From Octopus bimaculoides (lineage: Eukaryota): a DNA stretch of 44,524 bases. The translations under genes and the position numbers were made by a program. The stretch is taken from assembly GCF_001194135.2 (NCBI RefSeq), contig NC_068993.1, positions 47,869,056 to 47,913,579 of the forward strand, written 5' to 3'. Each line of letters starts with the position of its first letter. The stretch's first letter is position 1. This document shows positions 14,750-15,750 of this stretch, piece by piece. The notes beneath the pieces were generated by a model. It searched no databases, was not told the DNA's origin, and saw only the letters and a list, made by a program, of their open reading frames with translations.

Positions 14750-14947
14750 ATATATATATATTTAATATAGAATAGTATAGAATCTTTCTATACACAAAGA
14801 GGGGACCTTTGTCAGGACTCCTTACATGCTAAACAGTCCAGTTCATGCCTAAACTACAAAAGAAAAAAATTCAAGAGGCACGCCGATTATGACACCCAAA
14901 CGAGCAAAAAAAGTGAATCAGTGAATCCGTACTCGAGTGAAAAGGTG

Positions 14948-15019
14948 AATCCCAACTCTAGTTTCGCCATTAATCTCCAAAATATACTAATTTCAGATCT
15001 GTAGCTCGTCAGCGAGATC
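14948..15019 (-). ncRNA. Type I hammerhead ribozyme motif, copy 1
   Basis: GAUCUCG-CUGACGA(15012-15006)-GCUA...UGGC-GAAA(14965-14962)-C-UAGA-G-U-U-GGGAUU. Core nucleotides are intact. The stem III loop has lost its palindrome and stem I is shifted by 1 nt. Confidence 0.65.
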
Positions 15020-15445
15020 GCTAATTAATGAATGATTATGTAGTTTCAAATACGCACCGAAAACACATGTGCAAGGCAGCTACATATTCATGCATCTTGG
15101 TGTCGAACTTAGTGCACGCGCGTAAATGCATAGTCCAGCAGTAAATAAATAAATTTAAAAGTGCGTCATATACAGCCTCTAAATGATAAATATTGCTATC
15201 ATAAATATGGGGGTAATGGATTAAAATAATTTATTACCAGTGGTTAGCATGCATAAACATAAGACACAAGACATAACATATTTTTAAAAATATGTGTATC
15301 GAATGTATCTATATACGAAGCAGAGACTTTTGACAGGACTCCTTACATACTAAAACGACCAGTTAAAACCTAAACCACAGAAAGAAGAATTCATGAGACA
15401 GGCCGATTATGACACCAGGACGAGCAAAACAAAAGTGAATTAGTT

Positions 15446-15518
15446 AATCTCGAACTCGAGTTTCGCCATTAATCTCCAAAATAAAGTAATTTGGGATCTG
15501 AGGCTCGTCAGCGAAAAA
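15446..15518 (-). ncRNA. Type I hammerhead ribozyme motif, copy 2 (best preserved)
   Basis: UUUUUCG-CUGACGA(15511-15505)-GCC[GAUC-CCAAA loop UUUGG-A-GAUU]GGC-GAAA(15464-15461)-C-UCGA-G-U-U-CGAGAUU. All core positions match the consensus CUGANGA/GAAA/NUH. Stem I is 5 bp. The predicted cut lies between 15453 and 15452. Confidence 0.75.
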
Positions 15519-15677
15519 AATATAAAAGTGTATGGAATCTTGCTATACACAAAGAGGAGACCTTTGTCAGGACTCCTTACAGGTTAAACAAGGCCAGTTA
15601 AAACCTAAACCACGAAAGGAAGAATTCATGAGGCACGCCGATTATGAGACCCGAACGAACAAAAAAGTGAATCAGTT

Positions 15678-15750
15678 AATTCCGAGCTCGAGATTCGCCA
15701 TTAATCTCCAAAATAAACTACTTTGGGATTTTTGTCTCGTCAGCGTGGAT
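15678..15750 (-). ncRNA. Type I hammerhead motif, copy 3 (core-mutated, probably inactive)
   Basis: CUGACGA at 15743-15737 and the distal part of stem II are retained. GAAA is changed to GAAU and the invariant U of the NUH triplet is changed to C (GAAU-C-UCGA-G-C-U). Confidence 0.55.

What the first reader, a model, noticed from the sequence alone, without database searches (positions are those of the whole stretch)
14775..15750. Tandem hammerhead-ribozyme repeat array: candidate cephalopod retrozyme or Penelope-like terminal repeat
Seen: three diverged direct copies of a ~220-245 bp unit. On the minus strand each copy has CUGACGA, a long hairpin, then GAA(A)-C-UCGA-G-U-H-type sequence, which is the order of a type I hammerhead. 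Copies 2 and 3 are head-to-tail with a 232-nt period. Established: tandem type I hammerheads in 200-400 nt monomers occur in newt satellite 2, schistosome Sm-alpha, cave-cricket pDo500, metazoan non-LTR retrozymes and Penelope-like element termini. There they self-cleave multimeric transcripts into monomers that can circularise. Inference: this locus is a partly decayed insertion of such an element family, which I cannot match to a named family.
Basis: partly seen in the sequence, partly recalled or inferred. Interest (0 to 1): 0.85.

Follow-up and report, generated by a model that had tools for sequence, protein, structure and literature searches.

The report
Decayed hammerhead-ribozyme tandem repeat (retrozyme relic)
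Three worn copies of a ~232-bp repeat each carry a type I hammerhead self-cleaving ribozyme motif, which makes this an old, largely inactive insertion of the already known "retrozyme" kind of animal mobile element.

Summary
On the minus strand, 14775-15745 holds three direct copies of a 223-240 nt unit that are 74-82% identical. Copies 3 and 2 lie head to tail with a 232-235 nt period. Copy 1 follows after a 276-nt unique spacer.

Each copy starts with CUGACGA, a G10.1-C11.1-closed long hairpin, and GAA(A)C-NNNN-G(U/C)U. Rfam Hammerhead_1 matches copy 2 at 27.0 bits and copy 1 at 19.8 bits. Both are below the gathering score of 34, but the copy 2 match has E=0.016 for the whole window against all 4227 families. 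Copy 3 has lost the A15.1-U16.1 pair.

In copy 2, ACUCGAGU is an 8-nt palindrome. This is the short dimer-forming helix III typical of newt, retrozyme and Penelope-type hammerheads.

No reverse transcriptase or GIY-YIG domain was found anywhere in the window. Both ends of the array abut microsatellites. The units are 39-40% GC.

Best reading: a decayed three-unit insertion of a non-autonomous, Penelope-dependent non-LTR retrozyme. At most one or two ribozymes are still competent.

Not testable here: genome-wide copy number, circular RNA, cleavage, and the cephalopod origin. The hammerhead is not better conserved than the rest of the unit, and the monomer fold is unremarkable. This is a new member of a known kind, of modest interest.

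The parts
15514..15745 (-). Repeat copy 3 (232 nt). It is the 5'-most unit on the transcribed minus strand.
   Evidence: 81.5% identical to copy 2. GC 39%.
15680..15745 (-). Degenerate hammerhead of copy 3. CUGACGA is intact, but GAAA has become GAAU and GU has become GC, so the A15.1-U16.1 pair is lost. Position 10.2 is mispaired, and no upstream unit supplies the 5' strand of helix I.
   Evidence: Sequence read. No Hammerhead_1 match even at E<=10.
15291..15513 (-). Repeat copy 2 (223 nt), head to tail with copy 3.
   Evidence: Relaxed TRF reports 15294-15745, period 232, 1.9 copies, 82% matches.
15447..15517 (-). Best-preserved type I hammerhead (copy 2). Helix I is UUUCG/CGAGA (5 bp). Core is CUGACGA. 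Helix II is GCC/GGC, a 3x3 internal loop, then a 9-bp bulged stem with a 9-nt loop. Then GAA, and helix III A-U and C-G with tetraloop UCGA. H17 is U.
   Evidence: Rfam RF00163, 27.0 bits, full model 1-45. The hand-built hammerhead fold scores -11.0 kcal/mol against an MFE of -17.0. Helix II is also predicted by the MFE fold.
15452..15453 (-). Predicted self-cleavage site of copy 2: GUU|C, between 15453 and 15452.
   Evidence: Position of H17. The cleavage itself is inferred and was not tested.
15015..15290 (-). Unique 276-nt spacer between copy 2 and copy 1. Its last 6 nt (AUCUCG) form a perfect helix I partner for the family's CGAGAU. It begins with a 20-nt palindrome.
   Evidence: No other copy in the window. 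Complementarity read.
14775..15014 (-). Repeat copy 1 (240 nt), the most diverged.
   Evidence: 74-77% identical to the other copies.
14949..15018 (-). Hammerhead of copy 1. The core is complete (CUGACGA, GAAAC, GUU). Loop 3 is UAGA, so the palindrome is lost. Helix I is out of register by one nucleotide. The predicted cleavage site would be 14954|14953.
   Evidence: Rfam RF00163, 19.8 bits, E=0.095. Also hit by the descriptor.
14927..14949 (-). 23-nt insertion private to copy 1. It duplicates the helix III/helix I 3' segment and retains ACUCGAGU.
   Evidence: Alignment columns 72-94. Sequence.
14704..14769 (.). (CA)n/(AT)n microsatellite abutting the 3' end of the array, next to gap 14694-14703.
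15756..15814 (.). (TG)n-type microsatellite abutting the 5' end of the array, followed by gap 15823-16078.

Best explanation
The locus is an old, decayed insertion of a non-autonomous 'non-LTR retrozyme'. This is a short non-coding tandem repeat whose minus-strand transcript carries one type I hammerhead ribozyme per ~232-nt unit.

**How the family works (inferred from the described life cycle of such elements):**
1. A multimeric transcript is made.
2. Neighbouring hammerheads pair through the palindromic ACUCGAGU to form a stable intermolecular helix III (a double hammerhead).
3. They cleave after GUU, releasing ~232-nt monomers with 5'-OH and 2',3'-cyclic phosphate ends.
4. A tRNA ligase of the RtcB type circularises the monomers.
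5. The circle is copied in a rolling-circle manner by the reverse transcriptase of an autonomous Penelope-like element.
6. The tandem cDNA is integrated by that element's GIY-YIG endonuclease, preferentially at microsatellites.

**At this particular locus** the machinery is mostly dead.
- Only copy 2 keeps a complete hammerhead.
- Copy 1 keeps the core but has a damaged helix I and helix III.
- Copy 3 has lost the essential A15.1-U16.1 pair.

No double hammerhead can form here. At best there would be weak single-motif cleavage at 15453|15452, and perhaps at 14954|14953.

**Shown:** the repeat structure, the hammerhead motif and its state in each copy, the absence of coding capacity, and the flanking microsatellites.
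**Inferred:** transcription, cleavage, circularisation and Penelope-dependent mobilisation.
For: - **Tandem structure:** three direct copies, two of them head to tail at 232-235 nt.
- **Covariance model:** Hammerhead_1 hits cover the full model on copies 2 and 1 (27.0 and 19.8 bits). The copy 2 hit is the only sub-threshold hit in the window that is not driven by a microsatellite.
- **Descriptor:** 2 hits against 0.03 expected by chance.
- **Fold:** CUGACGA and G10.1-C11.1 are invariant in all copies. In copy 2 helices I, II and III can all form, at -11 kcal/mol.
- **Dimer helix III:** ACUCGAGU is an 8-nt palindrome, and a 13-mer around it self-dimerises at -13.9 kcal/mol. Short helix III with a palindromic loop and action as dimers is the stated hallmark of metazoan type I and Penelope hammerheads (PMC4209133, PMC7229834).
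- **Size and composition:** unit size (150-450 bp) and GC of 39-40% (<45-50%) match the published description (PMC7229834).
- **No coding capacity:** no RT, GIY-YIG or any other credible Pfam domain in 263 open segments of >=45 aa across the window.
- **Microsatellite flanks:** both array ends abut microsatellites, while only 17% of window positions lie within 15 nt of one. My estimate for both ends by chance is ~0.03. Penelope-like elements show such an insertion bias (PMC8557442).
- **Link to Penelope elements:** retrozymes are reported as derivatives of Penelope terminal repeats (10.64898/2026.07.22.740005).
Against: - Both hammerhead hits are below Rfam's gathering score of 34.
- With three copies there is no compensatory change. 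Helix II varies only on its 5' strand.
- The hammerhead region is not better conserved than the rest of the unit: 75% vs 72% invariant columns, p=0.62. The 22-nt invariant run gives only p=0.036.
- The monomer is not unusually structured, whether linear or circular, natural or consensus: z=-1.2 to -1.6 and 59% paired. Retrozyme circles are described as highly self-paired.
- In copy 2 a competing CUCG-AGUU-CGAG hairpin makes the MFE 6 kcal/mol better than the hammerhead fold.
- No second locus of the family could be found. None exists elsewhere in the window, and the public collections on hand gave only chance 20-mer matches.
- The published operational criterion of two consecutive units with complete hammerheads is not met.
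Confidence: 0.77

Rival explanations
1. The repeats are the pseudo-LTR or 3'-terminal region of an autonomous Penelope-like element. On this reading they are a stack of heavily 5'-truncated tandem copies, with the coding part deleted, lying outside the window or hidden in an assembly gap, and they do not belong to a dedicated non-autonomous family.
For: - Penelope elements carry hammerheads in their terminal repeats. They insert as partial tandems, often with problems in short-read assemblies, and prefer microsatellites (PMC4209133, PMC8557442).
- Helix II is long and helix I is short (5 bp), as in Penelope min-hammerheads (PMC4209133).
- The array is bounded by gaps.
- Retrozymes and Penelope terminal repeats are reported to be homologous, so the boundary between the two readings is soft (10.64898/2026.07.22.740005).
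Against: - No RVT or GIY-YIG match in any open segment of >=45 aa in 39 kb of resolved sequence.
- The adjacent gaps are 10 and 256 N, far too small for a 3-4 kb element if the gap sizes are estimates.
- There is no extra nucleotide between A9 and G10.1, and a real 2-bp helix III with a tetraloop is present. Both are described as canonical retrozyme-type features, as opposed to min-hammerhead features.
Confidence: 0.12
2. An ordinary local tandem duplication or minor satellite happens to contain a hammerhead-like string. There is no ribozyme function and no retrotransposition.
For: - The scores are below Rfam's gathering threshold.
- There is no covariation, no excess conservation of the motif and no unusual folding stability.
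- This is the only locus seen.
- The finding was picked by eye from many windows, so selection bias applies.
Against: - The copy 2 hit covers the full model with E=0.016 for the whole window against 4227 families.
- My rescaling to a single family over a ~5 Gb search space still gives an E-value of about 0.2, before requiring a tandem context.
- A composition-based estimate for the full descriptor (core, G10.1-C11.1, two more helix II pairs and a 5-bp helix I) is ~1e-6 per window. This is inference, building.
- The palindromic helix III, the unit length, the low GC and the microsatellite flanks are independent features, and all point the same way.
Confidence: 0.07
3. The functional unit is composite. 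Copy 2 and copy 1 act as terminal hammerhead-bearing repeats flanking a ~276-nt internal region, so that cleavage at both releases a 499-nt RNA. This would be analogous in layout to plant LTR retrozymes, and copy 3 would be an extra terminal repeat.
For: - Copies 2 and 1 are the two units with complete cores.
- The last 6 nt of the spacer (AUCUCG) are perfectly complementary to the family's post-cleavage CGAGAU, giving a better helix I than the copy 3/2 junction does. This suggests that the end of the spacer is element-derived.
Against: - The spacer has no other copy or relative in the window.
- Six complementary nucleotides can arise by chance.
- Copy 3 and copy 2 show that units can be directly adjacent.
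- Heterogeneous arrays interrupted by unrelated insertions or deletions are common in old repeats.
Confidence: 0.04

Closest known systems
Metazoan non-LTR retrozymes (Cervera & de la Pena 2020, PMC7229834), e.g. the Acropora millepora 220-240 bp and Mytilus galloprovincialis repeats
   Same: - Type I hammerhead, one per unit.
- Head-to-tail units within the 150-450 bp range.
- GC below 45%.
- No ORF, LTR, PBS or PPT.
[quoted passage not shown]
   Different: - Helix II is much longer: 42 nt between G10.1 and C11.1, with an internal loop and a bulge, against about 4 bp.
- No recognisable loop 1/loop 2 tertiary contact.
- Only 2+1 diverged units, with one clearly intact ribozyme.
- The monomer is not predicted to be unusually self-paired.
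- Expression and circularity are unknown.
Newt satellite 2 / axolotl HHR_Amex1-2 repeats (PMC7229834; Forster et al. 1988 as cited in PMC4209133)
   Same: - Weak helix III with a palindromic loop, which implies cleavage as a double hammerhead in multimeric transcripts.
- Tandem genomic repeats.
   Different: - Amphibian units are 330-350 bp, present in ~10^5 copies, and keep loop-loop contacts.
- Here the unit is 232 nt, the copy number is unknown, and the cleavage triplet is GUU.
Hammerheads in the pseudo-LTRs of Penelope-like elements (Cervera & de la Pena 2014, PMC4209133; Craig et al. 2021, PMC8557442)
   Same: - Enlarged helix II and short helix I (4-5 bp).
- Palindromic 15.2-16.2 and loop 3, with a dimeric mode of action.
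- Conserved G10.1-C11.1.
- Partial tandem organisation and microsatellite insertion sites.
   Different: - No RT or GIY-YIG ORF nearby.
- No unpaired nucleotide between A9 and G10.1.
- A true helix III is present, where min-hammerheads have none.
Schistosoma Sm-alpha and cave-cricket pDo500 hammerhead repeats (seed members of Rfam RF00163)
   Same: Same ribozyme class and type I topology. The Rfam model built on them aligns end to end with copies 1 and 2.
   Different: - Sm-alpha is a SINE-like element with a tRNA-type polymerase III promoter. No tRNA-like part was found here.
- The score stays below the family's gathering threshold because of the 31-32 nt insertion in helix II.
Plant LTR retrozymes (PMC4918200)
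   Same: Non-autonomous, hammerhead-bounded RNA that is proposed to circularise and to be reverse transcribed by a borrowed RT.
   Different: Plant elements use type III hammerheads in ~350-bp LTRs, have a PBS and PPT, have GC above 55%, give 600-1000 nt circles, and depend on Gypsy elements.

Membership tests
Hammerhead ribozyme, type I (Rfam RF00163) | Conserved core: C3-U4-G5-A6-N7-G8-A9, G12-A13-A14, the A15.1-U16.1 pair and H17. | tested here: met
   Complete in copy 2 (CUGACGA ... GAA-A-C-UCGA-G-U-U) and in copy 1. Broken in copy 3 (U15.1, C16.1)..
Hammerhead ribozyme, type I (Rfam RF00163) | Three helices around the core with helix I open-ended (type I order), and a G10.1-C11.1 pair closing helix II. 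| tested here: met
   Copy 2 has helix I of 5 bp, helix II of 3+9 bp and helix III of 2 bp, at -11.0 kcal/mol. Helix II is also found in MFE folds. G10.1-C11.1 is invariant in all three copies. Copy 1's helix I is out of register.
Hammerhead ribozyme, type I (Rfam RF00163) | Score at or above the curated gathering threshold (34 bits). | tested here: not met
   27.0 and 19.8 bits. The shortfall is attributable to the 31-32 nt insertion in the helix II loop, which the alignment shows as an insert.
Hammerhead ribozyme, type I (Rfam RF00163) | Covariation supporting the helices. | tested here: inconclusive
   Only three related copies are available. The changes in helix II are one-sided and none is compensatory.
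Hammerhead ribozyme, type I (Rfam RF00163) | Site-specific self-cleavage. | not testable with these tools
   This needs in vitro transcription of monomer and dimer constructs.
Metazoan non-LTR retrozyme | Head-to-tail tandem units of 150-450 bp, each with a type I hammerhead, and low GC. | tested here: met
   Units are 223-240 nt. Two are adjacent and one is displaced by 276 nt. GC is 39-40%.
Metazoan non-LTR retrozyme | [quoted passage not shown] This is the operational criterion for an active retrozyme in 10.64898/2026.07.22.740005. | tested here: not met
   Of the adjacent pair, copy 3 is defective. The two complete cores (copies 2 and 1) are separated by the spacer. TRF with that paper's parameters does not report the array. 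The locus is therefore a relic and not an active copy.
Metazoan non-LTR retrozyme | Non-coding: no LTR, PBS, PPT or ORF. | tested here: met
   No Pfam domain was found. The open + strand frame has no homologue and no codon-position bias.
Metazoan non-LTR retrozyme | Monomer RNA is highly self-paired. | tested here: inconclusive
   z-scores are -1.2 to -1.6 against dinucleotide shuffles, and 59% of the consensus circle is paired. The copies are decayed.
Metazoan non-LTR retrozyme | Dispersed multi-copy family in the genome, expressed as linear and circular monomers. | not testable with these tools
   The source genome and its RNA-seq are not available. Scans of the collections on hand gave only chance matches.
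Autonomous Penelope-like element | ORF encoding a telomerase-like RT with a GIY-YIG endonuclease, flanked by hammerhead-bearing pseudo-LTRs. | tested here: not met
   No RVT or GIY-YIG hit at E<=0.01 in 263 open segments of >=45 aa over the whole window. Strongly fragmented remnants shorter than 45 aa would have been missed.
Sm-alpha-type SINE with hammerhead | tRNA-derived polymerase III promoter head. | tested here: not met
   ARAGORN finds no tRNA-like sequence. No tRNA family appears among the sub-threshold Rfam hits in the array.

The most novel reading that the evidence does not exclude
The unit may belong to a still-active, lineage-specific retrozyme family, possibly cephalopod. Its hammerhead would carry an unusually long, interrupted helix II in place of the canonical loop 1/loop 2 contact, and it would cleave only as a dimer through ACUCGAGU. 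Such a family would produce abundant ~232-nt circular RNAs in a clade where none have been reported. A bolder variant is that hammerhead-bounded composite units such as the 499-nt copy 2-spacer-copy 1 segment are mobilised as cargo-carrying circles.
Probability: 0.15. Interest if true: 0.5.

Novelty: new member of a known kind. Interest (0 to 1): 0.3.

Why it matters
Type I hammerhead repeats are already known to be widespread in animals, molluscs included, and to mark Penelope-dependent retrozymes that give small circular RNAs. This locus adds one more lineage-specific family.

If the window is indeed cephalopod, no paper in the searchable library reports such a family for that clade. It also adds a structural variant with a 42-nt helix II, which standard tools miss. 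Rfam's gathering threshold and TRF-based pipelines both fail on it.

This is useful for repeat annotation and as a seed for a genome-wide search. As a single decayed locus it does not open a new question.

Tried and rejected
1. **Coding reading.** The + strand frame is open through copies 1 and 3 (73-77 codons), while the other frames carry 4-6 stops.
   - There is no homologue in 5.8 billion protein clusters.
   - Substitutions fall 5/17/13 and 12/10/16 on codon positions 1/2/3.
   - The ORF was rejected as chance.
2. **More copies through public collections.** The invariant 20-mer TTTTGGAGATTAATGGCGAA gave 7 metagenome hits, 1 prokaryote-genome hit and 0 viral hits. None extends beyond the 20-mer, so they are chance matches.
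3. **More DNA of the source organism through an interspersed repeat.** I searched with the ORF of the abundant interspersed repeat at 20269-20634 and found no protein hit. The organism could not be identified.
4. **Alternative long helix III.** The CUCG-AGUU-CGAG hairpin would put A opposite A at 15.1/16.1 and destroy helix I. I rejected it in favour of the 2-bp helix III that the Rfam model also chooses.
5. **A second hammerhead.** The conserved CUGACAAAGG block lacks G8 and any GAAA partner, so it is not one.
6. **Excess conservation of the hammerhead and an exceptional fold of the monomer.** Both tests were negative or inconclusive.
7. **Other sub-threshold Rfam hits.** The mir-297, mir-3149 and similar hits are all microsatellite artefacts.
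8. **Direct six-frame Pfam scan by DNA reference.** I replaced it with scans of all stop-free segments of >=45 aa.
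Full report
**What is in the sequence**

Read on the minus strand, 14775-15745 contains three direct copies of one unit.
- Copy 3: 15514-15745, 232 nt.
- Copy 2: 15291-15513, 223 nt.
- Copy 1: 14775-15014, 240 nt.
- Copies 3 and 2 are head to tail, with register spacing of 232-235 nt. 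Copy 1 follows after a 276-nt stretch (15015-15290) that has no relative elsewhere in the window.
- Pairwise identities are 81.5%, 76.6% and 74.5%.
- Copy 1 carries a private 23-nt insertion (14927-14949) that duplicates the segment just after GAAAC.
- No further copy exists in the 44.5-kb window.
- TRF with default parameters, or with the published retrozyme-pipeline parameters, does not report the array. It reports 15294-15745, period 232, 1.9 copies and 82% matches only with relaxed parameters.
- The array abuts a (TG)n tract and a 256-N gap on one side, and an (AT)n/(CA)n tract and a 10-N gap on the other. Its real extent may therefore be larger than assembled.

**The hammerhead**

Each unit begins with CG-CUGACGA-G, a long hairpin closed by G10.1-C11.1, then GAA.
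- Copy 2 continues A-C-UCGA-G-U-U|CGAGAU.
  - This gives every invariant hammerhead nucleotide and the A15.1-U16.1 and C15.2-G16.2 pairs, with a UCGA tetraloop.
  - H17 is U, and there is a 5-bp helix I with the UUUCG that ends the preceding unit.
  - The hand-built hammerhead fold is valid at -11.0 kcal/mol.
  - Helix II appears unchanged in the unconstrained MFE fold. It consists of GCC/GGC, a 3x3 internal loop, a 9-bp stem with one bulge and a 9-nt loop.
- Rfam finds nothing at gathering thresholds.
  - With E-value thresholds, Hammerhead_1 (RF00163, gathering score 34) aligns over its whole length to copy 2 at 27.0 bits and to copy 1 at 19.8 bits.
  - In a search of the whole window against all 4227 families, the copy 2 hit has E=0.016. 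It is the only listed hit that does not lie in a microsatellite.
  - The missing bits are explained by the 31-32 nt insert in the helix II loop, which is visible in the alignment.
- A linear descriptor (CTGANGA-N20-50-GAAACNNNNGTH) hits copies 1 and 2 only, against 0.03 expected per window.
  - Adding the pairing requirements gives roughly 1e-6 per window from base composition. This is my estimate and counts as inference.
  - The motif is therefore very unlikely to be a chance string even at genome scale, and less so inside a tandem repeat of the right length.

**State of each copy**

- Copy 2 is intact.
- Copy 1 keeps the core but is damaged in two ways.
  - Its loop 3 is UAGA, so the palindrome is lost.
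  - Its helix I needs a one-nucleotide shift.
- Copy 3 is defective in three ways.
  - It has GAAU and GCU, so both partners of the essential A15.1-U16.1 pair are changed.
  - Position 10.2 is mispaired.
  - No upstream unit supplies a 5' strand for helix I. It gives no Hammerhead_1 hit at E<=10.

**Mode of action implied by the anatomy**

- ACUCGAGU in copy 2 is a perfect 8-nt palindrome. It is retained in copy 1's duplicated segment.
- A 2-bp helix III is too weak for efficient cleavage by a single motif. Two motifs in a multimeric transcript can pair through the palindrome to form a double hammerhead. The 13-mers around it dimerise at -13.9 kcal/mol.
- This is the arrangement described for newt and axolotl repeats, for invertebrate retrozymes and for Penelope hammerheads. 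Those have a short helix III of 1-2 bp capped by a 2-4 nt palindromic loop, and they are active as dimers (PMC4209133, PMC7229834).
- A caveat is that CUCGAGUUCGAG offers a competing hairpin or duplex register. It makes the MFE 6 kcal/mol better than the hammerhead fold.

**What kind of element**

- Unit length, GC of 39-40%, tandem arrangement and lack of coding capacity match the published definition of metazoan non-LTR retrozymes. That definition is 150-450 bp units, GC below 45-50%, and no LTR, PBS or PPT (PMC7229834).
- I scanned all 263 stop-free, non-low-complexity segments of >=45 aa in six frames of the whole window against Pfam.
  - No reverse transcriptase or GIY-YIG endonuclease appeared.
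  - The only hits were five unrelated marginal ones, as expected by chance for that many queries.
  - An autonomous Penelope element is therefore not adjacent. The neighbouring gaps (10 and 256 N) are too small to hide one if their sizes are estimates.
- Both array ends touch microsatellites, while 17% of window positions lie within 15 nt of one. Jointly that is about 0.03. This fits the microsatellite insertion bias of Penelope-type endonucleases (PMC8557442), although A/T-rich tails can also seed microsatellites.

**Negative and inconclusive tests**

- Within the three copies the hammerhead segment is not better conserved than the rest (49/65 vs 118/165 invariant columns, Fisher p=0.62).
- The longest invariant run is 22 nt, TATTTTGGAGATTAATGGCGAA. 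It covers the 3' strand of helix II plus G12-A14 and is only marginally unusual (permutation p=0.036).
- Changes in helix II are one-sided and none is compensatory.
- The 232-nt monomer bounded by the predicted cleavage sites is not exceptionally stable.
  - Linear natural monomer: z=-1.58.
  - Circular natural monomer: z=-1.53.
  - Majority-consensus circle: z=-1.23, 59% paired.
- These results are what neutral decay of an old insertion predicts. They do not test the family, but they also give no positive support.
- By the preprint's operational rule of two consecutive complete hammerheads, the locus is not an active retrozyme.

**Limits**

- I could not obtain any other copy of the family.
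  - Exact-match scans of the metagenome, prokaryote-genome and viral collections with the invariant 20-mer returned only matches that do not extend beyond the 20-mer.
  - Protein-space searches with the repeat's open frame and with an abundant interspersed repeat found nothing.
- The source organism is therefore not identified.
  - The window looks like a draft eukaryotic assembly. It has 34.5% GC, 12.8% microsatellite, 15 gaps, at least two SINE-like repeat families in 4-5 copies each, and no protein domain.
- SINE richness and abundant Penelope elements are reported for octopus and other coleoids (PMC8967140).
- I found no paper in the searchable library that describes hammerhead repeats in cephalopods.

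**Verdict**

It is a decayed three-unit array of a hammerhead-bearing, non-coding tandem repeat of the non-LTR retrozyme kind, with one intact ribozyme (copy 2), one marginal (copy 1) and one dead (copy 3).

Its distinctive trait is a 42-nt interrupted helix II, which pushes it below standard detection thresholds. It is a new member of a known kind. Interest is modest (0.3). Confidence in the best explanation is 0.77.

Noticed in passing
window 3681-4100(+), 5360-5762(-), 9952-10359(+), 20176-20563(-), 28650-29111(-): An interspersed repeat family of ~400-450 bp is present in five copies (68-92% identical), each with an internal microsatellite. It looks SINE-like, but ARAGORN finds no tRNA head. 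A protein search with its 122-aa open frame found nothing.
   Followed up: partly
window 16767-16932(+), 28255-28468(-), 34581-34702(-), 37821-38029(-): A second short interspersed repeat family (~165-210 bp, 72-81% identical) is present in four copies. One copy lies about 1 kb from the hammerhead array.
   Followed up: no
window 14771-15001(+) and 15526-15750(+): The same + strand reading frame, antisense to the ribozyme, is free of stops through all of copies 1 and 3 (73-77 codons), while the other frames have 4-6 stops. It has no homologue and no third-position excess of substitutions, so I judged it chance.
   Followed up: yes
window 15276-15295: A perfect 20-nt palindrome, ACATATTTTTAAAAATATGT, lies exactly at the junction of copy 2's tail and the unique spacer. 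It could mark a breakpoint or an insertion site.
   Followed up: no
window 15015-15020 (minus strand AUCUCG, just 5' of copy 1's CUGACGA): The last six bases of the 'spacer' are perfectly complementary to CGAGAU after the copy 2 cleavage site. That gives a 6-bp helix I like the Rfam consensus. It hints that part of the spacer belongs to a longer variant of the element.
   Followed up: partly
window 9394-9734 and 21090-21582: There are long trinucleotide arrays: (CTA)n and (CAT)n of ~340 bp in total, and (AAG)n, (ATG)n and (TCA)n of up to 140 bp. They create long low-complexity ORFs on both strands.
   Followed up: no
whole window: All ~150 sub-threshold Rfam matches other than Hammerhead_1 are miRNA models (mir-297, mir-3149, mir-1277, mir-466 and others) sitting on TG/TA microsatellites. 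They are artefacts. In addition, 15 assembly gaps total 5,285 N, about 12% of the window.
   Followed up: yes
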